A DNA stretch of 39,136 nt from contig NW_021835717.1 in the NCBI RefSeq assembly GCF_006345805.1, forward strand, positions 1 through 39,136, given 5' to 3'. Of this stretch, positions 811 to 37,900 are shown in pieces. The stretch's first letter is position 1. Every line of letters starts with the position of its first letter. The stretch comes from Octopus sinensis (Eukaryota). The notes under the pieces are model-generated. The model did not search any database and had not been told where the DNA came from. It saw only the letters and a program-made list of their open reading frames with translations. The translations under genes and the position numbers were made by a program.

Positions 811-1012
811 TGAGGACAAAAATCCATCAAATGTAAATAATGTAAATAATGTTCCAACCCTTTGCCGATTATCTCATCCATTTGCACAACTGTTGTTTCC
901 TGTAATGTTGGGAATTTTTTTCAGTCAGAACCATTGTAGCCCGTTCGGACCTGGACATTTCCAGTTTGGAACTACTGTTGTCTGCTCGGTCACCATTGCA
1001 GGAAAGAGTTCT

Positions 1013-1181
1013 AGGCGCAGACGCGGCTGTGTGGTAAGTAGCTTGCTTACCAACCACATGGTTCCGGGTTTAGTCCCACTGCGTGGCATCTTGGGCAAGT
1101 GTCTTCTGCTATAGCCCCGGGCTGACCAATGCCTTGTGAGTGGATTTGGTAGACGGAAACTGAAAGAAGCTGTCGTATATA

Positions 1182-1223
<42 letters not shown>

Positions 1224-1243
1224 TATATGTGTGTGGTGTGTGG

Positions 1244-1283
<40 letters not shown>

Positions 1284-1500
1284 TTGTGTGTATGTTTGTG
1301 TGTCTGTGTTTGTCACCCTAGCATGCTTGACAACCGATGCTGGTGTGTTTACGACGTCCCCGTCACTTAGCGGTTCGGCAAAAGAGACCGATAAAATAAG
1401 TACTGGGCTTACAAAGAATAAGTCCCGGGGTCGAGTTGCTCGACTAAAGGCGGTGCTCCAGCATGGCCGCAGTCAAAATGACTGAAACAAGTAAAAGAGA
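1013..1500 (+). mobile_element. tRNA-derived SINE, family C (CORE-like CCTTGGGCAAGT segment, internal AT/GT microsatellite, CAGTC-loop-GACTG tail)
   Basis: A-box/B-box-like head (GGCTGTGTGGTAAG...GGTTTAGTCCC); body shared with copies at 8029, 10706, 16169, 20933, 27944; tail GGCGGTGCTCCAGCATGGCCGCAGTCAAAATGACTGAAACAAGTAAAAGAG. Confidence 0.92.
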
Positions 1501-1598
1501 GTAACGAGAGAGTAAGTTTTGAATTGTGGAGGCACTTCAGTTTGTCCTGTATATGAAAGTGGAAGGTTTACGTGTTCGAAAAGTTAGAAAAATAAATT

Positions 1599-3373: not shown

Positions 3374-4093
3374 ACTTTGTGAGTTTTTGTGTGTGTGTGC
3401 ATAGGAGCTTTGCTACAGCAGCCATAGTGAGACACTAGTAAACCGGGGAGTCTATTGACCATTGCATTTATCATCCCTGCTGCGGCCGTTGAAGATATGC
3501 CTCGCCACAGGCGGCCATTTACGGTGGTTAAGTTTCACCATTATTGTCTCTTTTCGTCTTGTTGTTGTTGCTGTTGTTATTGATGTATTGTCCAGCAAGC
3601 TGACCAGCATCTAGTAACAGGATCCCTTCTACACACATACACAAATACATTATAGTCAGACATACAGAACACCCGCAAAACACACACACACGCGCGCACA
3701 GTCAAACACACACAGGTACACTGATATATGCACTTTTACAGGCTTCTGCGTATTTGCGCACGCGCGTGTGTGTGTGTGTGCACATAGATGAAAATGTGTG
3801 CAGCTATAAATGCACATGTATGCACGTACAGGTATATGCGTTTATGCAAATGCATGTGTATGTACACTCGTATCTAGTCTAGTGGCGGTCTACTCTCGGG
3901 CAGGTCCTGCGCACGTGAGCTTTCTCTAGCGCTCTCTAAACGACCTGGGAGGTTTCCATATCCTCCCCAGCCGACGTTAAGTAGATTACTGGCACTTCGG
4001 CCATCCATGACTGGAACTTGGAAAAAATACTGGGGTGGTGTCCCGTAGCTTTCTCCAGACAAATGGGATTTGATCTCAGAATATAGACAGCCA

Positions 4094-4104
4094 GAAGATA
4101 TACC
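4094..4104. other. Target-site duplication copy (GAAGATATACC), downstream side of the 5.8S-SINE chimera
   Basis: Identical 11-mer at 4468-4478; 10/11 copy at 4483-4493. Confidence 0.8.
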
Positions 4105-4338
4105 TATTTCTTTACTACCCACAAGGGTCTAAACACAGAGGGGACAAACAAGGACAGACAAATCGATTAAGTCGATTACATCGACCCAAGTGTGTAACTG
4201 GTACTTAATTTATCGACCCCGAAAGGATGAAAGGCAAAGTCGACCTCGGCGGAATTTGAACTTAGAACGTAGCGGCAGACGAAATACCGCTAAGCATTTC
4301 GCCCGGCGTGCTAACGTTTCTGCCAGATCGCCGCCTTT
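4105..4338 (-). mobile_element. Full-length family A SINE (A/B-type head, tail ...TGTGGGTAGTAAAGAAATA)
   Basis: Near-identical to copies at 12493-12725 and 20560-20790. Confidence 0.93.
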
Positions 4339-4467
4339 GACCGGACGGGGCCCCGGGACGATAGAATCCCGGGGCCGCAATGTGCGTTCGAGGTGTCGAT
4401 GTTCACTGAGTCCTGCAATTCGCATCAGTTCACGACGGACGAGCCGAGTGATCCCCCGTCCAGGTCG
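4339..4467 (-). pseudogene. 5.8S rRNA retrocopy (~22-nt internal deletion, ~10-nt 3' truncation) fused to the 5' end of SINE A
   Basis: Minus strand: CGACCTGGACGGGGGATCACTCGGCTCGTCCGTCG|TGAACTGATGCGAATTGCAGGACTCAGTGAACATCGACACCTCGAACGCACATTGCGGCCCCGGGATTCTATCGTCCCGGGGCCCCGTCCGGTC. It contains the 5.8S signatures GGATCACTCGGCTCG, GAATTGCAGGAC and GAACGCACATTGCGGCC, plus the GC-rich CCCCGGGA/TCCCGGGG hairpin. Confidence 0.93.
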
Positions 4468-4482
4468 GAAGATATACCGTCG

Positions 4483-8028: not shown

Positions 8029-8451
8029 TTTATTACTCTTTACTCTTTTACTTGTTTCAGTCATTTTGACTGCGGCCATGCTGGAGCACCGCCTTTAGTC
8101 GAGCAAATCGACCCCGGGACTTATTCTTTTGTAAGCCCCCAGTACTTATTCTATCGGTCTCTTTTGCCGAACCGCTAAGTGACGGGGACGTAAACACACC
8201 AGCATCGGTTGTCAAGCAATGCTAGAGGGACACACACAGACACACAAACATATACACACACACACTTATATATATATACACATATATACGACAGGCTTCT
8301 TTCAGTTTCCGTCTACCAAATCCACTCACAAGGCATTGGTCGGCCCGGGGCTATAACAGAAGACACTTGCCCAAGATGCCACGCAGTGGGACTGAACCCG
8401 GAACCATGTGGCTGGTTAGCAAGCTACTTACCACACAGCCACTCCTGCGCC
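8029..8451 (-). mobile_element. Full-length family C SINE with 13-bp TSD
   Basis: TSD TATTGCTAATAAT at 8016-8028 and 8452-8464. Confidence 0.95.
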
Positions 8452-8613
8452 TATTGCTAATAATATTTCATATATTAACGCAGTTATTCATTCTCAATCC
8501 GTTCTCAGATTCGATTGTGAACATACTGACGTATTTCTGTCGTCTGAGAATGTCTTCTTTCTTTAGACAATATATGTTTATAATATATATATATGATTCA
8601 TTGATGTGGGGGA

Positions 8614-10705: not shown

Positions 10706-11094
10706 TTTTACTTGTCTCAGTCATTTGACTGTGGCCATGCTGGAGCACCGACTTTAGTCGAGCAAATCGACCCCGGGACTTATTCTTTTGTAAGCCCAGT
10801 ACTTATTCTATCGGTCTCTTTTGCCGAACCGCTAAGTGACGGGGACGTAAACACACCAGCATCGGTTGTCAAGCAATGCTAGGGGGACAAACACAGACAC
10901 ACAAACACACACACACATACATATATATACATATACACATATACGACAGGCTTCTTTCAGTTTCTGTCTACCAAATCCACTCACAAGGCATTGGTCGGCC
11001 CGGGGCTATAGCAGAAGATGCCACGCAGTGGGACTGAACCCGGGACCATGTGGTTGGTTAGCAAGCTACTTACCACACAGCCACTCCTGCGCCT
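10706..11094 (-). mobile_element. Family C SINE (small internal deletion)
   Basis: Near-identical to the 8029-8451 copy. Confidence 0.93.
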
Positions 11095-11289
11095 ATATAA
11101 TTTTTATGTTTAATTTTTATGTGAATTACTAAAGCAGGCGAGAACTTAAATACAATGAACTTACATTCCACCTTGACATATCATGAGACGTGTTGTCTGC
11201 TCACTGGTAACACAATGTCCTCTTCTAATTCTAAGTTCGACAAAGATTATTTTGAGAAGGTGCTTAAAATGTTATTTCTAATTTAGAAA

Positions 11290-11664: not shown

Positions 11665-11826
11665 TAATTGGTTCCTATTGTTTCTGTCAGCTAAATTTCA
11701 CTTGCAAAGCGTGGCTCGACATGAGCTTACGATAAATGATAAGTCGGAAGTGCTGCGCCAGAGAATCGAACACAAAACCCAAGTAGTTTTGAAGTAAACC
11801 TCTTAACCACACAGCTATACCTGCAT
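11665..11826 (-). mobile_element. Highly degraded family C SINE head
   Basis: GTTTCTGTCAGCTAAATTTCACTTGCAAAGC...TTAACCACACAGCTATACCTGCAT resembles the reverse complement of the C head. Confidence 0.55.
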
Positions 11827-12013
11827 TTGAAGGTGAAGGTATAGGGAAATGAAACTGAAATTAGACCATTCAGAATTAGGATTTATAGAAGTAACAAGTG
11901 TAAGACAATGGTAACAAACTCTTGCCGAGGGTGTTAACAAAGGGATCGAGCCCAACGTATTTCTGAGACGAACTTCTGAACTACAGGGCCATGCTGGTGC
12001 CACTTATACACTT

Positions 12014-12134
12014 ATACACGGCCATATCACGTTGAAAGCACCGGTTCTCGTCCGATCACCGAAGTTAAGCAACATCGAGCCTAGTTTGTACTTAGATGGG
12101 TGACCGCTTGGGAAACCTAAGTGCTGTAAGCATT
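12014..12134 (+). pseudogene. 5S rRNA-derived sequence (full length, ~10-15 substitutions) without a TTTT terminator
   Basis: ACGGCCATATCACGTTGAAAGCACCGGTTCTCGTCCGATCACCGAAGTTAAGCAACATCGAGCCTAGTTTGTACTTAGATGGGTGACCGCTTGGGAAACCTAAGTGCTGTAAGCATT matches metazoan 5S; box A (AGTTAAGC) and box C (TACTTAGATGGGTGACCG) are recognisable. Confidence 0.95.
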
Positions 12135-12140
12135 CCATTC

Positions 12141-12198
12141 AAATGGCGGTGCCCCAGCATGGCCACAGCTCGTGAGCTGAAACTAGATAAAATAAAAT
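12141..12198 (+). mobile_element. Family C-type retroposon 3' tail fused to the 5S copy
   Basis: AAATGGCGGTGCCCCAGCATGGCCACAGCTCGTGAGCTGAAACTAGATAAAATAAAAT versus C tail AAAGGCGGTGCTCCAGCATGGCCGCAGTCAAATGACTGAAACAAGTAAAAG. Confidence 0.88.
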
Positions 12199-12492
12199 AT
12201 TATAGGAGGGTAAAGACGTGAACCGAAATATTGACACACAACTCTGGTTTTCAGGGAATTGAAATACAAGCTGGAGCACCTGAATATATTCACAGTTAGG
12301 ATATAAAGAGAAAAGGGAGCTGATGCCGTAGTAAAAGACACTGTGGGTGTTACGTAAAGGGATCGAACTCCGACGTAATTCTGAAGGGTTTTGAAACGAC
12401 CTTCTTAACCACGCGGCCCCTGACGAAGACAATTCGAAAAGAAACGTTTCACTCGCAACGTTTTAGTTTTCATGGAATTGAAAGTTAAAATA

Positions 12493-12725
12493 TATTTCTT
12501 TACTACCCACAAGGGGCTAAACACAGAGGGGACAAACAAGGACAGACAAATGGATTAAGTCGATTATATCGACTCCAGTGCGTAACTGGTACTTAATTTA
12601 TCGACCCCAAAAGGATGAAAGACAAAGTCGACTTCGGAGGAATTTGAGCTCAGAACGTAACGGCAGACGAAATACGGCTACGCATTTCGCCCGGCGTGCT
12701 AACGTTTCTGCCAGCTCGCCGCCTT
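12493..12725 (-). mobile_element. Full-length family A SINE with 16-bp TSD
   Basis: TSD ATTGAAAGTT(A/G)AAATA at 12477-12492 and 12726-12741. Confidence 0.95.
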
Positions 12726-13309: not shown

Positions 13310-13620
13310 AAGGCGGCGAGCTGGCAGAATCGTTAGCACACCGGGCGAAATGCGTGGGTAGTAGCCCCTTGTGGGTAGTAAAGAAATAGGTATTTCGTCT
13401 GTCTTTACGTTCTGAGTTCAAATTCCGCCGAGGCCGACTTTGCCTTTCATCCTTTCGGGGGTCGATGAATTAAGTACCAATTGCGTGCTGGGGTCGAACT
13501 TTGACTTTTATTCTCCAGCACGGCCGTGGCCTTCGGGCTGAAACATTTTAAAGGATTTTAAGGATTTAAGTCGATAAAATAAATACCAGTTGAACATAGG
13601 ATTCGATGTGATCGAATAGG
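13310..13620 (+). mobile_element. Family B SINE interrupted by a 34-nt family A tail (13355-13388) and a C-type tail fragment (~13510-13567)
   Basis: Head to AAATGCG, then TGGGTAGTAGCCCCTTGTGGGTAGTAAAGAAATA, then GGTATTTCGTCTG...; later CTCCAGCACGGCCGTGGCCTTCGGGCTGAAAC. Confidence 0.85.
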
Positions 13621-13794
13621 ATCGCGGGACTGGCCCAGTTTCGAGCCTTCGCTCCCCCTGCTAGCGATGTATAAAGGGTGCAGAGCGTTGCACAGAAAAC
13701 CAGCTGGTGGAGAATCTGCCTGGGGTTAAACCAGTGCTAACATTCAACTGCCACTTTGAGGTGGCTACTCGCTTTATTGTTTATATATATATAT

Positions 13795-14001
13795 CTTTTA
13801 TCTTTTACGTGTTTCTGTCATTAGACTGCGGCCAAGATGGGGCACCGCTTTGAAGAACAGTTTGTCGAGTGAATAGACATGGCTTTGGTCGGCCCGAGGC
13901 TATAGTAGAAGACACGTGCCCAAGGTGCCACGCAGTGGGACTGAACCTGGAACCATGTGGTTGGGAAGCAAGCTTTTTACTACACAACCACGTCTGTGCC
14001 T
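13795..14001 (-). mobile_element. Internally deleted, older family C SINE
   Basis: Tail (13795-13880) joined directly to the head/CORE part. Confidence 0.85.
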
Positions 14002-14009
14002 ATATATAA

Positions 14010-14813: not shown

Positions 14814-16168
14814 GTGGAAAGAGATAGACAATTTGAGAGATTAGAAAACAAAAAGATAAAAAGATAGAAAGAAAATGAGAGAGAGAGAGAGAGAGATGGG
14901 AAGAGAGAGGTAGACAGTGAAAGAGATGAAATAGGTAGATAGAAGGGGAGAGAGAGTGAGAAAACCAGAGATTGACAGAGACACAGAAAAGTAATTTATG
15001 GATTTAGGATCCTGAATATCACTGGGTAAATCTGTTCCTGTGAAGAAATGTTTCACACCAAATCATGTGATTCTTACCCTCTTACCTTCCCCAACCTTCA
15101 TATCCTTCATGTCCGCATCCTCCAACATTCTTTTGTCCCGGAATTGACCTCACCTGCTTTCTTTATTGCTAAGTGTACGTGTTTTTAAGGGAATTAAGAA
15201 ATTTTAGGTATGTTATTTATGCTGTCCCCCAATTATAAAACTCTGGACGATCGCAAACTTTACCTAGTATGTAGCACTGGTCCTGAATGCTCTATAATGT
15301 TAGAAAGACGAGACCGACTCAATTTTCCTTAACCTATGGTATCAATGATAATGTTTTTGGGAGAGCGTTGGAAAAACGGTAGGAAGTGAAAGCACTAAAC
15401 AGAGGCTTGATCATTAGGCATTAATATGAAAGTTAATACTTTGGAAGCAAAAACTTTCTAAGCTATATCAGTAAGTTGATATGCGAGGTTGTTTAGCGGA
15501 GACAAAAACCGCTGCAAAGAACGAAGCAATTCGCTCGGTTTTTTAAAAAATGTCAAATAATTTCATGTTAAAATCTGATGCAGAAAAAATATATTTAGCT
15601 TGCTTAAACTTGTTCCTCTAGGACCACGGTGAAGTTCACAAAATTAAACCAGATGAACAAACAATTGAACAGAAAAAATGTGGTGTTGTGTTCGTCAATT
15701 TCCGGTGACAAAATATTACTGTGAGAAATCTAAGAACATTGCAAGAATTTGGTGATAGCTTGACATAATTAGAAAGAAAGCAGCATATTTTATCCCTACA
15801 CATGGGTCACAGAAGTACCAAGCCTTACTAAAATGCCAAAAAATTATTTATTATAAAGGACAACATGAGAGAGGGCGACCGCAATATATTACCATATTAA
15901 AAGTGAGAAGAGGGAAAAACAAAGGTTACGGCTGCCGTAATGGAATTCAGTAAGTCAAAAGTACTCGTATATATTTCAAATATTTTTTTTTACAATATTA
16001 CTATTTATACTGACATTTAAAGTCCTTAAGACATTTATGTTGAGGAAGGAAGCCAGCTGGATGAATGAGGGGTGCTGTTGGGAAACAGTGACCGAAATCC
16101 AAGGCGCAGCCTCTTCGTTAATACACTGGAAGTATAAGTTAGAAGAAACATTATATGAAAAAAATCAT

Positions 16169-16587
16169 AGGCGCAGGAGTGGCTGTGTGGTAAGTAGCTT
16201 GCTAACCAACCACATGGTTCCGGGTTCAGTCCCACTGCGTGGCACCTTGGACAAGTGTCTTCTGCTATAGCCCCGGGCCGACCAATGCCTTGTGAGTGGA
16301 TTTGGAAGACGGAAACTGAAAGAAGCCTGTCGGATATATGTATATATATATGTATGCGTGTGAGTGTTTGTGTGTCTGTGTTTGTCCCCCCTAGCATTGC
16401 TTGACAACCGATGCTGGTGTGTTTACGTCCCCGTCACTTAGCGTTTCGGCAAAAGAGACCGATAGAATAAGTTCTGGGCTTCCAAAGAATAAGTCCCGGG
16501 GTCGATTTGCTCGACTAAAGGCGGTGCTCCAGCATGGCCGCAGTCAAATGACTGAAACAAGTAAAAGAGTAAAGAGAGAGTAAAGAG
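16169..16587 (+). mobile_element. Full-length family C SINE
   Basis: AGGCGCAGGAGTGGCTGTGTGG...GACTGAAACAAGTAAAAGAGTAAAGAG. Confidence 0.95.
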
Positions 16588-16943
16588 TATATTGACCTGG
16601 TTATCAGGTGTATCAATGTGTAACTAGTATTTGTAAAGAATCACACGGCTTCACCGTAAAACCGCCCAACGGTTTTATAACGGAAGATGATTGTTGAGGG
16701 CAGAAAGCGTGGGTTGAAGAGATTATGCAGTAAAGTTGCGAATTTATGAAGGAGGGCTTCCCCAGAGAATATTGCACCAGAACGAGATTAATCTATTCAA
16801 ACGGAGCTCCCCCCGTACACAACAACAACAACAACAAAATCAATATCACACAATACGTTTGCTGTACGAGTGTTAATATTCGATATTGGAAACAAGATGA
16901 GATCCGAGCCATTGATGTATGAACGCGAGCGCCCCCCCCACAA

Positions 16944-17068: not shown

Positions 17069-17978
17069 GTATGTATGTGTGTGATGTGTGTGTGTGTGTG
17101 TGTGCGTATATCTGTACAAAGATATATATATATATATATATATAGCATGTATGTATGTATGCATGTATGTATGTAAGTATGCATTTCTATTTAACTAGCT
17201 GGCTGTCTATGTATGTATATATATGTATATATATTATATATATATATATATATAATATATAATATATATATATATAATATATATATATATATAATATATA
17301 TAAATATATATATATTAATATATATATATATATGCATATATATATTATATATATTATGTTGGTCTGGGGGGATTCATTCTCTTTTAGTGCCTTATAATTT
17401 AACACACTCACCGGTAAAATTTCCACTCATTTACTTATTTAATATATACATACATTATTTTTATATGTGTGTGTATGTATGTATGTATGTATGTATATAT
17501 ATATGTATATATGTATATATATATATATGTATGTAAGTGTGTGTGTATGTATGTATGTATGTATGTATGTATGCATGTATGTATGTATGTATGTATGCAT
17601 GTATGTATGTATGTATGTATGTATGTATGTATGTATGTATGTATGTATGTGTGTATGTACGTACGTACTGGCTACTACAACCATGAGCTTTCACATCAGT
17701 AACGGTATTGACCAGTTGACCACCAGCGGCTGTTCAAAAGAAGACAAAGCAGAGAGAGAGAGAGAGAGAGAGAGAGTCCTGACATAAAAAAAAGCCAGCA
17801 TTACTGAAATGTCGCATTGCATCCATTGGACGTCACAGGCGAGGAGAGACGAACAGCAGTGCAGAAGGATGGAAGGAAGCGAGAAGGAAGCGTGAAGGTT
17901 GGGAAAGACCTTGGTCAGTCGATAGCCAAGCGTTGATCGCCAGAAACATGTTTTATTGGACACTCAACAGAAACAATT

Positions 17979-18033
<55 letters not shown>

Positions 18034-18251
18034 GGAGTTCATTCCCATTCAGGAAAGACGTTTCGCACTAACGCCTGAATGTGCATGCATCTATGTATGT
18101 ATACATGTATGTATGTATGTATGTATGTGTGTATGTGTGTATGTGTGTATGTATGAATGTATGTATGTATGTATGTATGTATGTATGCATGTATGTATGT
18201 ATGTGTGTATGTATGTATGTATGTATGTATGTATGTATGTTTGTATGTATG

Positions 18252-18306
<55 letters not shown>

Positions 18307-18320
18307 ATACATACATACAA
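16945..18320. repeat. Cluster of (AT)n, (GA)n, (GT)n and (ATGT)n microsatellites with short unique spacers
   Basis: Direct reading. Confidence 0.9.
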
Positions 18321-19133
18321 AAGTGCATGCCACTCAACACATACAGGTGTACGAAACAACACATTCTTTGCAAGTGATACGTAAATATTAATTGCTGGAC
18401 ACAGTATTTCATTTCGCGTTAGTGCTGAAGAAAGAGCAATAGGTCTTCGATCGCATTCGTTATATAGATATATTCGTTTGCGAAACGTCAGTACTTTGCA
18501 AAAGTCGCTCTGAATTTTATCGAAAACCTATAGAGATTAACTTAATAATGCAAATACACAGGCTCTGTTAGAATTATCTGATGGTTAATTAGAGTATTCT
18601 TTCTACCTTTAGGCTTCTTGTTGTTGACTAATACCAGGTGTATTCCTCGGTGCGTCTGACTACTTCCTTATTATTACTCCCAGTTTCCCGTTGTCGATTC
18701 GATCTCCGGATAATAGGGGTCTGAAGATGGACGACGAGAAACCTCGGAGGGACTATAACCGAATTGCTAATATTCAACTTCAATACATATTCAATATGTA
18801 TGTATATATATATATATATATATATAAATATGATATATATACATATAAATAAATAAGTGGAGTTTAACGCAGGTATAAATCAAATACTTTTACTTTCGAC
18901 ACTTGTTTCGAAGATTTCACTGATATTATTCAAAAGAATAAATGGTATAAAATAATGCAATCTTCTCTTCAGGGAAGTGAAAAAACGAAACTCGTCAATA
19001 AGACATTTTAGCAAAAATATATATTGCAACGGGGGAAACCTGAAGCAGAAAAAGCTATAAATTATAGCGTATAAACATTAAGTCAAAACCTTTTTGATAA
19101 AAATTACGAAGACTACCGAAACCAATACATATT

Positions 19134-20932: not shown

Positions 20933-21335
20933 TACTCTTTACTCTCTTTTACTTCTTTTACTTGTTTCAGTCATTTGACTGCGGCCATGCTGGAGCACCG
21001 CCTTTAGTCGAGCAAATCGACCCCGGGACTAATTCTTTGGAAGCCCAGTACTTATTCTATCGGTCTCTTTTGCCGAACCTTGCGGTTCGGGGACGTAAAC
21101 ACACCAGCATCGGTTGTCAAGCAATGCTAGGGGGACAAACACAGACACACAAACATATACACACATACATATATACGACAGGCTTCTTTCAGTTTCCGTC
21201 TACCAAATCCACTCACAAGGCATTGGTCGGCCCGGGGCTATAGCAGAAGACACTTGCCCAAGATGCCACGCAGTGGGACTGAACCCGGAACCATGTGGTT
21301 GGTTAGCAAGCTACTTACCACACAGCCACTCCTGC
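20933..21335 (-). mobile_element. Family C SINE
   Basis: Near-identical to the other C copies. Confidence 0.94.
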
Positions 21336-21611
21336 GTTGTGTGTTGTTTTTTTTTTAACGATGCATGTGAAACAATCGAATTCAAGGTATCTAATATCTA
21401 CGTAAAAAGCATTTTTGTTGTGATGCCATAAATAGCACGCGACACTTCAGAAATTCGATTTGCATTTTCTTTTCTTTTTTTTTTTTTTTTTTTTACTCTT
21501 CAATAAATGTTTCTGACCTGATTCACCGTTTGTGCGATATTGAATTTTTCATTTTTTATTTCTATGCTTGTCCTATTCATCCCTACACAAACATACACGC
21601 ACATGCTCATA

Positions 21612-22324: not shown

Positions 22325-22362
<38 letters not shown>

Positions 22363-22590
22363 TGTATGTATGTGCGTGTGTATGTGTTGTGTGTGTGTGT
22401 GTGTGTGTTTGTGTGTGTGTGTTTGTGTGTGTGTGTATGTGCGCGTGTGTGTGTGTGTGTGCGTGCGTGTGTGAGGTGTGTGTGTGGGGGGGTATGTGTG
22501 TGTATGTGTGTGTATGTGTGTGCGTATGTGTGTTTGTGTGTGTGTGTGTTTGTGCGTGTGTTTGTGTTTTTATGTGTGTGTGTGTGTGTG
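22325..22590. repeat. Interrupted (GT)n array
   Basis: Direct reading. Confidence 0.96.
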
Positions 22591-23300
22591 TTCGCGCCCA
22601 CGAAGTTTTTGAACGAGCTCAAGCATCCCCTCCAACCGAACATGTTTTGGTTTTTCTCAGACAAGGAATTTTTCTGCCAGGATCAGATGGTGAACACACG
22701 GAACAACCATTGGCTTGCCTTGTCCCCAAAACATGGAGTAATCACTAGTGATGGCGACGTTATACCTCTTTTCATCTTCCCACACGGCCTCACACTCAAC
22801 ACGGGAGTCTACATGAAGTGCCTGGAGGACGCAGTGCTGCCCTGGGTCAAGAGGGTGGCTGCTAGAAGACCCTATGTCTGGCAACAGCACTCTGCACCAT
22901 GCCGCACAAGCAGGAGAACCCAGTCATGGCAGTCAGACAATTTCTGCAACCACATCACCCCTAACATCTGGCCACCTAACTCCCCAGACTGTAACCCCTA
23001 AATTATTATGTGTGGGGCGCAGTTGAGCAAGGAACTAACAAAATTCCTTGTCACACCAAAGATGAACTGAAGGCGAGGATTATGACAGCATTCACCAGTT
23101 TAATTAAGGAGACCGTCCAGAAGACTTGCAAGTGATTCCAAAGTTGTCTGGAGGCTGTGTTTGAAGCCAATGGCGATATTATTGAATAAATTTACTCTTT
23201 AGTATTCCAAGATATTTTTATGTAATTTTGGTAAATATATCTGTTAAAATGAGATGTCAGTGTTGCGTAACTTAGATGACAATTTATTCATCGCACCCTG
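22591..23300 (+). mobile_element. Tc1/mariner DD37D (maT/Bmmar1-type) transposase fossil, 3' half with right TIR
   Basis: WFFSD..FCQDQ.VN.RN..WL...; YVWQQ(H)SAP...[10 protein letters not shown](L)(N)YYVWGAVE with 37 residues between the second and third catalytic positions (both mutated). Frameshift at ~22999, in-frame TGA, end GDIIE-TAA (23187-23189); TIR ends CGCACCCTG then TA (23301-23302). Confidence 0.9.
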
Positions 23301-24145: not shown

Positions 24146-25405
24146 TTTTACTTGATATTGGGCGGGGGGGGGGAACCGTAATATCTTTGTTTAGTATATA
24201 CGGGGGTTTCGGATTCAATTCACGTTGATATTGTACTGTTAAAGTACAGAACAACAATTGTAAATAACGAAATAAAAATATTTTTTTCCTTTTTCTCTTA
24301 GAAAAACATGTAATAAAAAATGCGATTAAAAATGATAAATTCGTAAAAAATTAATAAAATAAATTTCTAAAAATATTTTTAAAATTTAAGGAAATTTATA
24401 TAATATTACAAAAGTGCAGCATTTTATTCATGTTTTGACTCTTTTTTTTGCATAAGGATACATTCTAAATCTTCCTCTCTCTCTCTCTGTCGCCTGCGTA
24501 TATACACACGCACGCGCACTCGCACACAGCATTCCTTCCAGTGTACTTGTGCTCAATGAATATCTCCTGCCCGTTCAAGTGTGAGACGCACTACAGTGGA
24601 ATATTAAAGCTACAGAAGAATGATATACGTTACATTTCGGCGATGTAGCAACAAAGAGAGAAGGAAGCGTCGTAAAAGTTCTTGATATACCAAATTACAC
24701 ATATACCAAATTACACATACAAGAAGCACAAGAAATGCGTTTCCTAGTCATAAGTGCTTTGGATTCACGATAAGGCTGTTGCCTTTCTGGGCTACAAGAT
24801 GTGTTCTACCCTTGAGCAAAAAACCTCATTCGACCCGTCTACTCCATTTCTCTTCACTGCAGTCTAGCTGGATGGAAATTATTACCAGATGAGCGTTGGT
24901 GTCGGCCTCTCTGACTCCAGCTCTCACCCACGCGATGTGCCGCCCTCTCTGCCCCCAGCTGTCACACATTGGATGTGCCGCTGAACTGATCCAAGTGTTC
25001 GAGGGCGAGATGATGTCTACGTTTGCTCGCAGCTACATAGGCATTTAAAACAATTAGCGTAAGCATGGTACATGCCATCGAGTTATATTTATAGCTTTAT
25101 GTGCTTCGAGATCCAATGTTCCAAAAAAAGAATTCTTTCTCGTTCTCTCGAAAGTTTATAAATTTTTACGACGTCAACAACTGTTAGTAAGAATACAATT
25201 TCTAAAATGGCTAGAGACTCTGGAAAGATTGTTTTGGAACAATCGTTGAACGTCTGCCGTGTCTACAGGAGATGTGGGTTCGTGTCCCATGGGCAGCCCT
25301 GAACTTTTTCTATCCAAAAGAGTTCTTCAACCCAATTTTCATATGCAATTCTTTGTAGCTGTTTGGGCTTCAAGATCTATTGTTCCATAAAAGAATATAA
25401 CACCA

Positions 25406-25448
25406 GTGCCCCAGCATGACCGCAGCTTTCAAGCTGAAAGTAGTTAAG
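25406..25448 (+). mobile_element. Isolated C-type retroposon 3' tail
   Basis: GTGCCCCAGCATGACCGCAGCTTTCAAGCTGAAAGTAG. Confidence 0.7.
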
Positions 25449-25481
25449 GGAGTATATCTTTAAACATACACACACAGATAA

Positions 25482-26927: not shown

Positions 26928-27943
26928 TGTTTCTTTATTAGCCACACAGGACTGCACACAGACAGGACAAATTACAAAAAAAGGGGGAATAAAATTAAAA
27001 AAAATTTTTTTTTAAAGTTGGGGAGGGAGAGGAAAAAAAATTGATCAATAGGGATCGTTATCACAGAAATGTCAATATGAAGTGTAAAGGGGAGGACAGG
27101 TGAGGTTTACCCGTGGAAAGAAAAGCCTACGGAAAAGACCACGGTAACCTCGGTCAATGAAGTCACATGTTATATTTCTTTTTTTTTTTTTTGCAAATAA
27201 GCAACTCTCTGTATTAATTTTTACGGTTCATAGAATCATAGTCAAGGTGGCTTCGTCATTCATACGTGCCATCCTTGCTACATTCACCCATCTTTTTTTT
27301 AAACATTCACTAGACAGATAGGCAGACAGATAGATAAGTATACATACAACTGTGAGCGGACATGCAATTGTTAACATATTCTTGTTTGTGTAATACGTTT
27401 ATAAGCAAACATGAAAACACATTGAAGAATTCAACACATGGCATACACCCACAGAGGTCACACACACACACACACACCAAACCCCACCAAAGTGACTTCC
27501 CTCTCAACAATTCCATTTCGAAATCTTAACGCAACCATCTTGAACACTTTAATGGCGTTTCTTAATCTGCGACACAATGACTCATGTTTTCCCGTTCTTT
27601 TATTCTTTTCTATTTTTTTTTTTTTTGCTTTTGTCGTCCATTCATCCTTCCCTCCATAATTTCTTTCTTTCCTTCTTTCCTTTTTTCCTTTTATTCTTTC
27701 TTACTTTCCTTCTTTCCTTTTCTTTCTTTTCCCACCTACTCCCCCTCCCCCTCCCCATTCAGTTATTGACTTATTTATGTTTTTGTATTTGTTTGTTTCA
27801 TTTGTTTTTTTTTTCTTATTCTGTTTTGTTTATTCTCTCGAATCTGGGATAAATACACACACACACGCACACACACACACACACGCACACACACGCACAC
27901 ACACACGCACACGCACACACACACACACATTTATATTCTCTCC

Positions 27944-28344
27944 CTTTAACTCTTTTACTTGTTTCAGTCATTTGACCGCGGCCATGCTGGAGCATCGCCT
28001 TTAGTCGAGGAAATCGACCCCGGGACTTATACTTTGTAAGCCCAGTAATTATTCCATCGATCTCTTTTGCCGAACCGCTAAGTGACGGGGACGTAAACAC
28101 ACCAGCATCGGTTGTCAAGCAATGCTAGGGGGACAAACACACACACACACAAACACACACACACATATATATATACATATATACGACGGGCTTCTTTCAG
28201 TTTCCGTCTACCAAATCCACTCACAAGGCATTGGTCGGCCCGGGGCTATAGCGGAAGACACTTGCCCAAGATGCCACGCAGTGGTACTGAACCCGGAACC
28301 ATGTGGTTGGTTAGCAAGCTACTTACCACACAGCCACTCCTGCG
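27944..28344 (-). mobile_element. Family C SINE
   Basis: Near-identical to the other C copies. Confidence 0.94.
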
Positions 28345-29170: not shown

Positions 29171-29364
29171 AAGACAGCAGCAATTACATCGTCCAAGAGG
29201 CATTTTATGCTGTAAAAAACGTACAAATGCTATTAAATTCACTTTAAATTTATATATATTCGTGAAATACCAAACTTTTTGTCACGCATCTGTAACCTGC
29301 ATATCCACGTATATATTTGCATGCATACATACATACATACATACATACATACATACATAAATAC

Positions 29365-29421
<57 letters not shown>

Positions 29422-29524
29422 CCTATGTACATACATATATACAAATATGTGTGTGTATGTGTGTACGTGTGTGTATATACTATTATTGAGTGAAATAGTA
29501 ACGCATGCCATATGTATGTATGAA

Positions 29525-29713
<189 letters not shown>

Positions 29714-29822
29714 GATTAAGATTCAGTTGAATTAGATACTTAAATTGAGGCAACAAGCCTGTTCGGTAAAGTGCGCGCAGCTCGAAAGGCCGTAATACAT
29801 TGATATTTAGACATCCTTGCTA

Positions 29823-29873
<51 letters not shown>

Positions 29874-29986
29874 CGCTCGAAACGTTAAACCCTCCTTCTT
29901 TCCTTCTTTCCTGAGCGTCTAATAATAATATATTGTTCCAAGTCCTCGCGTAGTTCTGTGTTTTTGTGCTTTCTTGTTTGGATTAA

Positions 29987-29989
<3 letters not shown>

Positions 29990-30080
<91 letters not shown>

Positions 30081-30175
30081 TTGTATACATACGTGTGTTC
30101 ACGCACGTGTGTATGTATGTATGTATATATATATGTATGTATGTATATATGTATGTATGTATGTATGTACGTATG

Positions 30176-30209
<34 letters not shown>

Positions 30210-31066
30210 TGTATTTGTGTATGTATGTATGCATGTATGTATGTATGTATGTATGTATGTATGTATGTATGTATGTATGTATGTATGCATGCATGCATGT
30301 ATCTATGTATGTATGTATGTATGTATGTATGTATGTATGTATGTACACATAGTAGAAGAGTTATTCATCTTTATCCGAGCACAGACTTTCCTGCAGATGG
30401 CGTAACATTTCATGGTAGGAAGTAGTACGGCGATGACATTTTTGGCCAGCTGCTGTGGATACGTCCACCACAGAATGTACGCCTGTGTGTTTGTGTCTCT
30501 GAATGTATGGTCGTATGTACTATATATTATGTACATATGTATGCAGGTATTTATGTGTGTATGTAAGTATATATGTATGTGTGTGTGTGCTTATGTATAT
30601 ACAAGTGGATTTCTGTGTGTGTATATGTATGTATGTATGTACGTATGCATGCATGCATGTATGTGTATGTACGTACGTGCGTATGTATGTATGCACGTAT
30701 GTATGCATGTGTATATATATGTGTGTTTATGTTATTATGTGAGAGTGTTTATGTGCGTCTGTGTATGTATATATGTACGCACGTATGTATGTACGTATCT
30801 ATGTATGTATGTGTGTATGTATGTATGCATGTATGTATGTATGTATGCATGTATGTATGTATGTACGTATGTATGTATGTGTGTATGTATGTATGTATGT
30901 ATGTGTGTGTATGTATGTATGTATGTATGTATGTATGTATGTATGTTTGTATGTATGTATGTATGTATGTATGTATGTGTGTATGTATGTATGTATGTAT
31001 GTATGTACGTACGTACGTACGTATGTATGTATGTATGTATGTATGTATGCATGTATGTATGTATAT
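29990..31066. repeat. Large degenerate (ATGT)n/(AT)n array
   Basis: Direct reading; source of the MYVC-repeat ORFs. Confidence 0.96.
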
Positions 31067-31883
31067 GCGTAGAATTAAAATTAATGTCTGTTAAAGATAT
31101 AAATTTGACTGCAATGTTAAGTTAGGGTATCGAATGTACGCCATTGTCATGTAGAGTCGTCTGACCTCTCTCAACTGACAGCCAGAGCAGCTGCCCCACT
31201 TTTCTATTGTACGATGTCGTTTAATTTGTTATCTAACTTAACCTTTTCACTAACAGCTATTTAACTAAAGTTACAGGAATTTAAGTGGTCGTAGTACCTC
31301 AGTTCTCTTCAATTTTACATCTATCACCTGCAGGCATTGTTTGAAAATGTAGGTCATTATTCAGTTGCGTAAGTTCCCTGGGTAGAACGGGTACACTAAA
31401 ATATCTAGAGTGAATTTGAACCTGTAACCCCTAAGGTTATAATTCAGTAAATTATTTATACAGTCACATGAGCGCTTCTATTAAGGTTATGGCTAAAACT
31501 AACTGTAGGCCCATCTGGGCGACAGAGCCCACTGTAGCGCCCGCTTTTGTCACAAGACCTGAGTGAATGGATTGTTTATCTGGGACAACTGATTGAAACA
31601 ATGTCATTTGAAACAGAGGAATAAACTATAGGGAAGGGTCATCTTAGAAGGCAAAACTGAGTTTAAATGAGTATGTCACGTGCTCTGAGAAGGACAATTG
31701 AACTGATGAATGTGCAACGCATTATTGTAACGACTATTCTGTGACCAACCTAATCTCGATAACTAATTATATAGCGATGTATTTTCCAAATATGTTTGCT
31801 TATGTATTGTCACGCCACTCCCTATTTCAATCGCTCGTATAATTGGTATCGTGAAACCCTGAGTCTCGATCCAAGAAACCATA

Positions 31884-33062: not shown

Positions 33063-33249
33063 ATGGGGGGTGCTGCAAATAAACTGTATCGAAACATAAT
33101 TCGAGGCCTATGAATTAAAATAATACACTAATTTCTATATTTAAAAAACTTATGCTGCCGGTGCCAATTCTCAAGCGACATAACTTCCGGTTTATATACG
33201 CGTGCATAAATAATCTAGAAGTAGTCTCTTTTTTATATTCATATGCACA

Positions 33250-33527
33250 CACACACGTATATATGCATGTATGTATGTATGTATGTATGTATGTGTGTGT
33301 GTATGTATGTATGTATGTATGTATGTATGTATGTTTGTATGTATGTATGTATGTATGTATGTATGTATGTACGTATGTATGTATGTATGTGTGAATGTGT
33401 GAATGTATGTATGTATTATGTATGTATGTATGTATGTATTTATGTATTTATGTATTTATGTATGTATATATGTATGTATGTATTATGTATGTATGTATGT
33501 ATGTATGTGTGTATTATGTATGTATGC

Positions 33528-33558
<31 letters not shown>

Positions 33559-33561
33559 TGC

Positions 33562-33592
<31 letters not shown>

Positions 33593-33651
33593 TTATGTAT
33601 GTATATGTATGTGTGTATGTATGTATGTATGTGTGTATTATGTATGTATGC

Positions 33652-33682
<31 letters not shown>

Positions 33683-33797
33683 TGTATGTATGCATATGTA
33701 TGTATGTATGTATGCATATGTATGTATGTATTATGTATGTATTTATTTATGTATGTATTTATATATGTATGTATGTATGTATGTATGCATGTATGTA
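33250..33797. repeat. Degenerate (ATGT)n array with recurring TATT/GCAT interruptions
   Basis: Direct reading. Confidence 0.96.
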
Positions 33798-33888
33798 TCA
33801 GCAGCTGGTGACGGCCGGAAGCCTTTGATGTTATGCCCATTCATTTAGGGTTGATTTGAGGGGGTAGATAATATATATATATTTATAC

Positions 33889-36690: not shown

Positions 36691-36959
36691 GTACGCTGAA
36701 GAGAAAGGGAGTTACAAAGAAACCGAGGCTGTCAGGGAATGTGAGGGTGAGTGGTGAGTGTGAGGTGTGAGTGACGTCTATATATAAAGGGATGTTATAT
36801 GGAGTGTAACTGGAGTGTTAACATCATTCTGCCTTTGTAGCTTTTCCCCACAAGATGTCTCCACTTGTTTATCTTGTTCTTGTCACTGTCTTCGGTAAGT
36901 CGGACATTCTTCACAACACATTTTTCTTCTTTTCTTTTTTGTGTTTTCCAAAACATTCT

Positions 36960-37900
36960 TCGTCACCGCCGTCTTCCTCGTCTTCGTAATCTTTGTCATC
37001 TTTTTTCTTCTTTCTTTTCTTTTTCTTTCATTTTTTCTTTCTTTCTTTCTGTCTTTATTTCTTTCATTCTTCTTCTTCTTCTTCTTCGTCTTCTTCTTCT
37101 TCTTCTTCTTCTCTTCTTCTTCTTCTTCTTCTTCTTCTTCTTCTTCTTCTTCTTCGTCTTCTTCTTCACCATCATCATCATCAACATCATCATCATTATC
37201 ATCATTTTCTTCTTCTTCTACATCATCATCATCATCACCATCATCTTCTTCTTCTTCTACATCATCATCATCATCACCATCATCTTCTTCTTCTTCTACA
37301 TCATCATCATCATCACCATCATCTTCTTCTTCTTCCTCTTCTTCCTCTTCTTCTTCATTATCATCATCATCATTAGCAGCAGCAGCATTATCATCCTCTT
37401 CTTCTTCTTCTCTCTCTCCTTCATCTTCATCATCATCTTATTCTTCTTCATCTCCTCCTCCTCCACCTTCCTCTTCTTTCTCTCTTTCGTTTCCTTCCTT
37501 TATGTCTTCCTTCTTTACTTTTACTTTTGCTCCTTCTCCTTCCCGTTCTTTCTTCTTTTCTTCTTTTATTTTCCTTCATCCTATCTTTTTTTCCTCTTAT
37601 TCTCTTTCTTCTTTTATTTTGCTATTATTCTCCTCTCCCGCCTTTCTTTGTCAAATTTCTTTCCATCCATTCTCTTTCTTTCTCATTCATTTCATTCCAT
37701 TTCTTTCAAATAACTTCTTCATTTGCCATTGCTTTGTTCTTTCAATGTTTCGTTGCTTTTACCGCTTCTCTCTTTCCTTCCTTCTTCCTTCCCTTCATTT
37801 CTATTTTTTCCTTCTTATTTTTTATTTCATTCATTCCTCTTTTCCCCAAATCTCTTTCACTGTATCTTTCTTCGTTGTATTCTTTTGTTGCTTTCATTCA
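36960..37900. repeat. ~1-kb pyrimidine-rich tract with (TTC)n/(ATC)n core
   Basis: Direct reading; stop-poor, hence the spurious 445-aa and 282-aa ORFs. Confidence 0.95.

What the first reader, a model, noticed from the sequence alone, without database searches (positions are those of the whole stretch)
12014..12198. 5S rRNA head fused to the retroposon 3' tail: candidate SINE3-type element
Seen: a complete 5S sequence with recognisable box A and box C lacks the oligo-T terminator and is joined through only CCATTC to the same 3' tail as the tRNA-headed family C SINE, ending in AATAAAAT. Its tail hairpin is a distinct variant (CAGCTC-GT-GAGCTG), so the tail was not simply taken from the local C copies. 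Established: 5S-derived SINEs (SINE3) use the 5S internal promoter and a LINE-derived tail, and are much rarer than tRNA SINEs. Inference: this is either a copy of a ~185-bp minimal 5S SINE or a one-off 5S/LINE-tail template-switch chimera. No clear TSD was found.
Basis: partly seen in the sequence, partly recalled or inferred. Interest (0 to 1): 0.8.

Follow-up and report, generated by a model that had tools for sequence, protein, structure and literature searches.

The report
5S rRNA fused to SINE tail
A complete 5S ribosomal-RNA sequence that has lost its terminator is joined to the short stem-loop tail shared by this genome's mobile SINE elements, so it is either a copy of a rare 5S-headed SINE or a one-off reverse-transcription chimera; the copy count that would decide could not be obtained here.

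Summary
Rfam finds a full-length 5S rRNA at 12014-12132 (92.9 bits). There is no T4 run until 12248. An 8-nt linker follows the 5S, then a 52-nt module (12141-12192) occurs nine more times in the window, each time as the 3' end of a SINE that is intact from its tRNA-like or unclassified 5' part. The module's 6-bp stem-loop covaries between lineages, so it is a selected structure of the LINE-recognition type. The 5S copy carries its own paired variant, closest to the single element at 25398-25449 and not to the abundant family C. Chance adjacency is very unlikely. The structure is that of a minimal SINE3-type retroposon, made by reverse-transcriptase template switching. I could not test whether it is one copy of a family or a unique chimera: none of the searchable collections holds DNA of this organism, and the papers I could search report no cephalopod 5S SINE. 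I put a family member at about 0.5 and a one-off chimera at about 0.4. The missing TSD says little, because five of six family C copies also lack one. A 5.8S-SINE chimera with a clear TSD lies at 4090-4478, so template switching onto rRNA does occur in this genome. Interest is moderate.

The parts
11987..12003 (+). GGCCATGCTGGTGCCAC: an inverted near-copy (14/17, 11 nt exact) of the element's own tail box, at the 5' junction. It may be filler made at integration, or it may be chance.
   Evidence: 6.8 bits, E 1.3. The 13 nt after GGCC have no counterpart in the paralogous empty junction 12419-12435.
12002..12017 (+). 8-nt tandem duplication ACTTATAC x2 that overlaps the 5' end of the 5S. It disrupts the outer part of helix I.
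   Evidence: Sequence. Three of the four outermost helix I pairs are broken.
12014..12132 (+). 5S rRNA-derived head, full length.
   Evidence: Rfam RF00001, 92.9 bits, model 1-120; 29/34 pairs kept.
12063..12077 (+). Box A of the 5S internal control region (AGTTAAGCAACATCG).
   Evidence: Mapped by alignment to recalled human and Drosophila 5S. Sequence level only.
12080..12085 (+). Intermediate element (CCTAGT).
12093..12110 (+). Box C (TAGATGGGTGACCGCTTG).
   Evidence: 17/18 identical to the recalled Drosophila box C.
12133..12140 (+). Linker TTCCATTC where the oligo-T terminator would be. With the preceding CA it reads CATTC CATTC.
   Evidence: The similarity to TTCCAT upstream of the 'g' tail is not significant (260/500 shuffles).
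12141..12192 (+). Retroposon 3' module: AAAT, then the conserved box GGCGGTGCCCCAGCATGGCCA (12145-12165), then the stem-loop, then AAAC-TAGA-TAAAA.
   Evidence: Alignment A2; model R1, 64.9 bits; BLAST to C and g tails.
12166..12179 (+). Stem-loop CAGCTC-GT-GAGCTG (6 bp, or 5 bp with a 4-nt loop).
   Evidence: Covariation across 10 tails: 95.8% of cells paired, 3 of 6 pairs changed on both sides, slid controls at most 35%. Also predicted in the MFE fold.
12188..12198 (+). Terminal short repeats (TAAAA)2T, the 3' end of the element.
   Evidence: Other lineages end in different short repeats: (GTAAAGA)n, (TAAAAGA)n, (TTTTAAGGA)n.
12248..12251 (+). First TTTT downstream, the likely Pol III stop for a transcript of this copy (about 235 nt).

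Best explanation
This is a retroposed fusion of a full-length 5S rRNA sequence to the roughly 60-nt 3' module carried by this genome's LINE-dependent SINEs. The module is a conserved box, a stem-loop and short terminal repeats. The result has the architecture of a minimal 5S-headed (SINE3-type) SINE with no body. Origin (inferred): a reverse transcriptase that was copying a tail-bearing RNA of the 'g'-like tail lineage switched template onto the 3' end of 5S rRNA. Propagation (inferred): TFIIIA, TFIIIC and Pol III use box A, IE and box C inside the 5S head. Because the T-run is gone, transcription continues through the tail to the first T4 in the flank. The partner LINE's reverse transcriptase recognises the stem-loop and terminal repeats and integrates the copy by target-primed reverse transcription. 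I commit, weakly, to this copy being a member of such a 5S-headed family rather than its only instance. What is shown: the fusion, the loss of the terminator, the sharing of the module between lineages with different 5' parts, and selection on the stem. What is inferred: transcription, recognition by a LINE, and the existence of a family.
For: The 5S is full length and its internal promoter boxes are recognisable. There is no T4 before 12248. The tail module occurs 10 times in 39 kb on four kinds of 5' part, three classed by eye only: family C with a CORE-like motif, a B-like body at 13310-13553, 'g' at about 25210-25449, and the 5S. The stem covaries across lineages and the 5S copy keeps perfect pairing with its own variant; every invariant column of the module is intact in it. 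All nine other tail modules sit on SINEs intact from their 5' parts, and there is no bare 5'-truncated tail in the window. An early template switch after only about 60 nt is therefore the unusual product for a one-off event, but it is exactly the compact structure that would amplify. Pairs of families that share a LINE-derived tail, one headed by 5S and one by tRNA, are documented elsewhere: HaSE3/HaSE1 and CoeSINE5/CoeSINE4 (PMC5786205).
Against: Only one copy is seen, and no second 5S or second copy of this tail variant is in the window. Copy number could not be measured. There is no TSD. The 5' end is irregular, with an 8-nt duplication and about 13 nt of filler. A 5.8S-SINE B chimera with a TSD in the same window shows that one-off rRNA chimeras do arise in this genome. 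No paper I could search reports a 5S-derived SINE in cephalopods or other molluscs. The partner LINE was not identified. Promoter function is judged from sequence only, and one conserved loop E position is changed (AGUA to UGUA).
Confidence: 0.5

Rival explanations
1. It is a one-off chimeric retrocopy. During a single retroposition event the LINE reverse transcriptase copied about 60-70 nt of a tail-bearing LINE or SINE RNA, jumped to mature 5S rRNA, copied it to its 5' end, and the product was integrated. It never served as a source gene and has no relatives that share its junction.
For: The same window holds a 5.8S-like sequence fused to the exact 5' end of a full-length SINE B copy and flanked by an 11-15-nt direct repeat (0/300 shuffles). 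5.8S has no Pol III promoter, so this can only be a template-switch chimera. The 5S is full length, as in known small-RNA chimeric retrogenes (Buzdin et al. 2003, cited in PMC4758252). The TT at the junction could be the 3' U's of the 5S rRNA. The irregular 5' junction with filler fits an untidy single event. No cephalopod 5S SINE appears in the papers I could search.
Against: The switch would have happened after only about 60 nt, yet all nine other tail-bearing elements in the window were copied through to their heads, and the 5.8S chimera switched at the very 5' end of its SINE template. Finding a unique event in one 39-kb window needs many such events genome-wide. Neither point is decisive.
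Confidence: 0.4
2. Independent adjacent insertions. A 5S gene fragment or pseudogene and a 5'-truncated retroposon tail landed next to each other by chance, in the same orientation.
For: The region is repeat-dense, with a tail module about every 4 kb, and the element sits inside a tandem pair of older SINE units. No TSD brackets the composite.
Against: The 5S ends and the tail module begins within 8 nt of each other, exactly where the terminator should be. The two are in the same orientation and the tail starts at the module boundary seen in the other lineages. No bare tail fragment exists elsewhere in the window. A rough estimate of such a juxtaposition for a given 5S copy is of the order of 1e-5 to 1e-4 (my inference from the densities).
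Confidence: 0.05
3. It is a functional or recently functional variant 5S rRNA gene (an orphon) whose downstream sequence merely resembles the SINE tail.
For: The Rfam score is high and most helices are intact.
Against: There is no terminator for 116 nt after the Rfam 3' end (12132). The outer part of helix I is broken by a duplication, there are C-A mismatches in helices II and V, and the conserved loop E AGUA reads UGUA. The downstream sequence is a full-length, high-scoring instance of the tail module.
Confidence: 0.02

Closest known systems
HaSE3 / HaSE1 of Helicoverpa armigera (a 5S-headed and a tRNA-headed SINE that share an RTE-derived 3' end)
   Same: A 5S rRNA head replaces the tRNA head on a 3' region that the same genome's tRNA-headed SINE also uses (PMC5786205; PMC3272025, listed).
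   Different: HaSE3 is a demonstrated multi-copy family with a known RTE partner. Here one copy is seen, the partner LINE is unidentified, and the element has no body between head and tail.
CoeSINE5 / CoeSINE4 (coelacanth) and SINE-1_Pmo (python), 5S-headed SINEs with LINE-derived tails
   Same: A 5S head with a LINE-derived tail, paired with a tRNA-headed sibling.
   Different: These carry longer bipartite RTE-derived regions from both the 5' and 3' UTRs. Here only a module of about 60 nt is present.
Zebrafish SINE3 (Kapitonov and Jurka 2003)
   Same: It is the founding example of the class: a 5S internal promoter plus a LINE-type tail (cited; details from my own knowledge).
   Different: SINE3 is several hundred bp long with a body, and has thousands of copies. 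This element is about 185-197 nt long and its copy number is unknown.
Chimeric retrogenes made by template switching (U6-L1, 5S-L1 and similar; Buzdin et al. 2003)
   Same: A full-length small RNA lies 5' of a 5'-truncated retroelement 3' end in the same orientation. Template switching to small RNAs is the proposed route to new SINEs.
   Different: Those chimeras are normally flanked by TSDs and end in poly(A). Here there is no TSD, and the 3' part is a stem-loop tail of the stringent type.
UnaSINE1 / UnaL2 of eel (Kajikawa and Okada 2002), 3' stem-loop plus terminal repeats recognised by the LINE
   Same: The tail anatomy matches: a conserved stem-loop followed by short tandem repeats at the very 3' end. 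The stem is kept by compensatory changes (the eel system is cited, with details from my own knowledge).
   Different: No LINE with this tail is present in the window, so the LINE origin of the module is inferred and not shown.

Membership tests
SINE3 (5S rRNA-derived SINE; SINEBase criteria, PMC3531059) | The head is at least 60% identical to 5S rRNA over at least 60 nt. | tested here: met
   Rfam 5S_rRNA, 92.9 bits, full length; 75-77% identity over 120 nt to recalled human and Drosophila 5S.
SINE3 (5S rRNA-derived SINE; SINEBase criteria, PMC3531059) | Short (under 1 kb), non-coding, interspersed rather than tandem. | tested here: met
   The element is about 185-197 nt. Only short chance ORFs cross it. 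It is the single 5S in the window and not part of a 5S array.
SINE3 (5S rRNA-derived SINE; SINEBase criteria, PMC3531059) | It carries extra non-5S sequence (body or tail) that sets it apart from a 5S pseudogene, shared with a partner LINE or with other SINEs. | tested here: met
   The tail module is shared with nine SINE copies of at least three other lineages. Sharing with a LINE could not be tested, because no LINE is in the window.
SINE3 (5S rRNA-derived SINE; SINEBase criteria, PMC3531059) | [quoted passage not shown] | not testable with these tools
   The metagenome, viral and prokaryote-genome scans hold no DNA of this organism: even the 8-copy family C motif finds nothing in the viral and prokaryote-genome collections. 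Protein-ORF look-ups found nothing.
SINE3 (5S rRNA-derived SINE; SINEBase criteria, PMC3531059) | A working internal type-1 Pol III promoter (box A, IE, box C) and read-through into the tail. | tested here: inconclusive
   The boxes are recognisable and no T4 occurs before 12248. Function needs transcription data.
Template-switch chimeric retrogene (one-off) | A full-length small RNA lies 5' of a 5'-truncated retroelement 3' end, in the same orientation, joined directly. | tested here: met
Template-switch chimeric retrogene (one-off) | The whole chimera is flanked by a target-site duplication. | tested here: not met
   No repeat was found. However, only one of six family C copies shows one with the same test, so the test has low power for this tail type.
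Template-switch chimeric retrogene (one-off) | The junction is unique in the genome. | not testable with these tools
   Same limitation as for copy number.
Functional 5S rRNA gene | An oligo-T terminator directly after position about 120, and an intact helix I and loop E. | tested here: not met
   No T4 until 12248. Three of the four outer helix I pairs are broken and loop E AGUA reads UGUA.

The most novel reading that the evidence does not exclude
This is a copy of a so far undescribed 5S rRNA-headed SINE family of a cephalopod. It would be the first SINE3-type family reported in Mollusca. It would have been born by head replacement on a stem-loop tail that at least three other SINE lineages of the same genome share. 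The neighbouring 5.8S-SINE chimera would then show the template-switching process that creates such families still at work.
Probability: 0.4. Interest if true: 0.5.

Novelty: new member of a known kind. Interest (0 to 1): 0.38.

Why it matters
5S-headed SINEs are rare and have arisen independently in only a few lineages. Each new case shows how a Pol III promoter module and a LINE-recognition module are joined to make a new mobile element. A cephalopod family would extend SINE3 to molluscs and would add a type-1 Pol III promoter to the SINE repertoire of genomes known for massive SINE expansion. If it is instead a single chimera, then together with the 5.8S-SINE chimera it documents frequent template switching by the resident reverse transcriptase, which is the raw material for SINE birth. 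Either way the element is an ordinary product of known mechanisms and not a new kind of system.

Tried and rejected
(1) I scanned public DNA collections for 5S-tail joins with GATGGGTGACCGC-N15-45-CCAGCATGGCC. The metagenome scan gave four chance hits in GC-rich bacterial contigs; the viral and prokaryote-genome scans gave none. (2) I tried to reach the organism's DNA through ORFs. The junction-spanning ORF (41 aa), the antisense 5S ORF (44 aa) and a family C ORF all found no candidates. The exhaustive representative search returned two unrelated repeat proteins. Four exact look-ups of window ORFs found nothing on record. Because even family C finds nothing, these negatives say nothing about copy number. 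(3) Literature: I found no cephalopod or mollusc 5S SINE, no printed match to the sequences, and no usable octopus 5S reference sequence. I therefore could not separate 'diagnostic' substitutions from native ones. (4) A permissive Rfam scan was swamped by microsatellite matches to miRNA models and showed no second 5S. (5) I considered that the tail extends to 12219 (GGGTAAAGACG resembles the C terminal repeats) and rejected it, because that stretch aligns with the paralogous empty junction (GACGAAGAC, 12422-12430). (6) I considered that the linker TTCCATTC is part of the g-type tail; the match is not significant (260/500 shuffles). (7) I considered a second stem, GCGG...CCGC, in the conserved box and rejected it by eye because it does not hold across variants. 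(8) An ORF at 22327-23001 looked transposase-like by eye, but Pfam finds nothing.

Full report
What is there. The window is repeat-dense eukaryotic DNA, about 40% G+C, full of microsatellites and SINE copies. I could not verify the taxon with the tools. Family C carries a CTTGGGCAAGT motif that resembles the CORE domain, and the octopus SINE OR2 is listed as a CORE-SINE in PMC4758252. At the reported coordinates cmscan finds a full-length 5S rRNA at 12014-12132 on the + strand. It scores 92.9 bits against a gathering score of 38 and covers model positions 1-120. Of the 34 consensus base pairs, 29 are kept. The losses are three of the four outermost helix I pairs and one C-A mismatch each in helices II and V, and the conserved loop E AGUA reads UGUA. 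I aligned the element to human and Drosophila 5S sequences recalled from memory, which makes this a lead rather than a test. That places box A at 12063-12077, IE at 12080-12085 and box C at 12093-12110. Box C is 17/18 identical to the Drosophila sequence. It is the only 5S in the window.

Terminator and junction. No run of four T's occurs anywhere between 12003 and 12247. The first TTTT is at 12248. Where the terminator should be, the sequence reads TTCCATTC (12133-12140), followed by AAAT and then the retroposon tail.

The tail. The stretch 12141-12192 is homologous to the 3' ends of nine other elements in the window. Six are full-length copies of the roughly 420-bp family C, which has a tRNA-like head with box A- and box B-like motifs seen by eye (ARAGORN calls no tRNA), a CORE-like motif, an internal (TA)n(TG)n tract and pairwise identity of 92-93%. 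One is a family C variant with an internal deletion (13794-14003, minus strand). One is a B-like body with this tail (13310-13553). One is a different element, 'g', whose head looks tRNA-like by eye (about 25210-25449). A covariance model built from the ten tails finds exactly these ten and nothing else above noise. This means no bare, 5'-truncated tail fragment exists in the window.

The module consists of a conserved box (GGCGGTGCYCCAGCATGGCCRC), a 6-bp stem-loop, CTGAAAC, and short terminal repeats that differ between lineages. The stem is CAGTCA/TGACTG in C, CAGCTC/GAGCTG in the 5S element, CAGCTT/AAGCTG in g and a GGCC/GGCT type at 13515. Across the alignment 95.8% of cells pair and three of the six pairs change on both sides. 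When the 3' partners are slid by one to three columns, pairing drops to 8-35%. The stem is therefore a selected structure, as expected for the site recognised by the reverse transcriptase of a stringent-type LINE. This is an inference by analogy with eel UnaL2/UnaSINE1, because no LINE is present in the window. The 5S element's tail matches every invariant column of the module and is closest to g (12146-12190 against 25403-25447).

Boundaries and insertion site. The 5S element lies between two tandem units of an older minus-strand element with a tRNA-like head. Unit U (11884-11990) aligns with unit U2 (12302-12418). The right flank of the 5S element (12220-12264) is homologous to the right flank of U2 (12436-12483), with 0 of 300 shuffles reaching the score. 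The U2 junction (12419-12435, 17 nt) thus serves as a paralogous empty site. This places the insert between about 11991-12003 on the left and about 12199-12208 on the right. It also indicates that GGGTAAAGACG at 12209-12219 is target DNA and not tail.

Two oddities sit at the 5' junction. One is an 8-nt tandem duplication, ACTTATAC x2 (12002-12017), which overlaps the first 5S bases. The other is 13 nt, ATGCTGGTGCCAC, which together with the GGCC of the U head form an inverted near-copy (14/17) of the element's own tail box. This could be filler from a twin-priming-like event on the palindromic GGCC. The model scores it at only E 1.3, so chance is not excluded. No TSD flanks the element. The same test finds a clear TSD in only one of the six full-length family C copies, so its absence here carries little weight.

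Is it more than chance? Yes. The end of a complete 5S and the start of a complete tail module lie 8 nt apart, in the same orientation, exactly where the terminator is missing. Tail modules occur about once per 4 kb and are otherwise always attached to SINE bodies. Given that, independent adjacency is of the order of 1e-5 to 1e-4 per 5S copy, by my estimate.

How it most likely works. The structure is a minimal 5S-headed SINE. A type-1 internal Pol III promoter sits in the head, the terminator is lost so that the tail is included in the transcript, and the first T4 is 50 nt beyond the element, giving an RNA of about 235 nt from this copy. The 3' stem-loop and repeat module would recruit the partner LINE's reverse transcriptase for target-primed reverse transcription. 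The fusion itself is best explained by reverse-transcriptase template switching from a tail-bearing RNA to the 3' end of 5S rRNA, which is the accepted route to new SINE heads (PMC5786205, PMC4758252). Only the anatomy and the selection on the stem are shown. Transcription, LINE recognition and amplification are inferred.

Family or one-off? This is the open point. For a family, all nine other tail-bearing elements were copied through to their heads. A switch after only about 60 nt is therefore an unusual single event, but it is exactly the compact product that would amplify. Pairs of 5S-headed and tRNA-headed families on one LINE tail are also known, namely HaSE3/HaSE1 and CoeSINE5/CoeSINE4. 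For a one-off, the same window contains a second rRNA chimera. A 5.8S-like sequence (4466 to 4331, minus strand, 48.8 bits, with an internal deletion) abuts the exact 5' end of a full-length SINE B copy. The composite is flanked by a direct repeat, GAAGATATACC within 15 nt, with 0 of 300 shuffles reaching the score. 5.8S has no Pol III promoter, so this is a dead-end template-switch product, and it shows that such events are not rare in this genome. I put a family member at about 0.5, a one-off chimera at about 0.4, chance adjacency at about 0.05 and a variant 5S gene at about 0.02.

Why copy number could not be tested. The metagenome, viral and prokaryote-genome collections returned only four chance bacterial hits for the junction pattern, and the viral and prokaryote-genome collections returned nothing for an invariant 23-mer of the 8-copy family C. 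Protein-based routes to public assemblies also found nothing. These used the junction ORF, the antisense 5S ORF, a family C ORF and exact look-ups of window ORFs. Since family C itself is invisible to them, these negatives are uninformative about the 5S element.

Comparison with what is known. The element meets three SINEBase criteria: a 5S-derived head, short length with interspersed placement, and extra sequence shared with other SINEs. The criterion of at least 100 copies is untested (criteria from PMC3531059). It works like HaSE3 or CoeSINE5, but it has no body and its partner LINE is unknown. It also meets the structural definition of a template-switch chimeric retrogene, except for the TSD. 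It is not a functional 5S gene. The papers I could search report 5S-derived SINEs in fishes, some mammals, Lepidoptera and Aspergillus, but none in cephalopods or other molluscs. Repbase and Dfam could not be consulted.

Verdict. If a family exists, it is a new member of a known kind. If not, it is an ordinary chimeric retrocopy. Interest is moderate at 0.38. One genome-wide BLASTN with the junction would settle the question.

Noticed in passing
window 4090-4478 (minus-strand element: 5.8S 4466->4331, SINE B 4337->4105): A 5.8S rRNA-like sequence (Rfam 48.8 bits, internal deletion of about 25 nt) is joined directly to the exact 5' end of a full-length SINE 'B' copy whose head looks tRNA-like by eye. 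The composite is flanked by a direct repeat (GAAGATATACC; 15 nt with 2 mismatches; 0/300 shuffles). It looks like a template-switch chimeric retrocopy, SINE RNA then 5.8S rRNA.
   Followed up: partly
window 11987-12003: An inverted near-copy (14/17) of the 5S element's own tail box lies at its 5' junction. It is absent from the paralogous empty junction. It may be twin-priming-like filler on the palindromic GGCC, or it may be chance (model E 1.3).
   Followed up: partly
window 11700-12490: Old minus-strand SINE units whose heads look tRNA-like by eye (H1 about 11740-11830, U 11884-11990, U2 12220-12418, plus part of a further unit at 12436-12483) lie head-to-tail in tandem. The U2 3' region contains a decayed copy of the same tail box (GGTGCTCCAGCTTG...CTGAAAAC). 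This is either a tandemly duplicated SINE or a SINE-derived short array.
   Followed up: partly
window 1012-1515, 2710-2893, 8036-8454, 10706-11096, 13794-14003, 16167-16589, 20933-21336, 27938-28344: Family C has eight copies in 39 kb, about 420 bp each and 92-93% identical. Each has a head that looks tRNA-like by eye, a CORE-like CTTGGGCAAGT motif, an internal (TA)n(TG)n microsatellite of variable length and the stem-loop tail. Only one of the six full-length copies has a clear TSD.
   Followed up: partly
window 13310-13567: A B-like SINE body carries the stem-loop tail module (variant GGCC-TTCG-GGCT) followed by (TTTTAAGGA)n. Canonical B copies (for example 4105-4337 and 12482-12725) end differently (CCCCTTGTGGGTAGTAAAGAAATAGGTA). 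This is evidence that tails are exchanged between SINE lineages.
   Followed up: no
window 17300-18400, 29300-31100, 33200-33800, 36900-37500: Long compound microsatellite and low-complexity tracts, (TATG)n, (TG)n, (TA)n, (ATT)n and T- or C-rich runs, generate many spurious long ORFs and spurious matches to Rfam miRNA models.
   Followed up: no
window 22700-23001: The C-terminal part of an ORF looked transposase-like by eye, but Pfam finds no family, so no call is made.
   Followed up: yes
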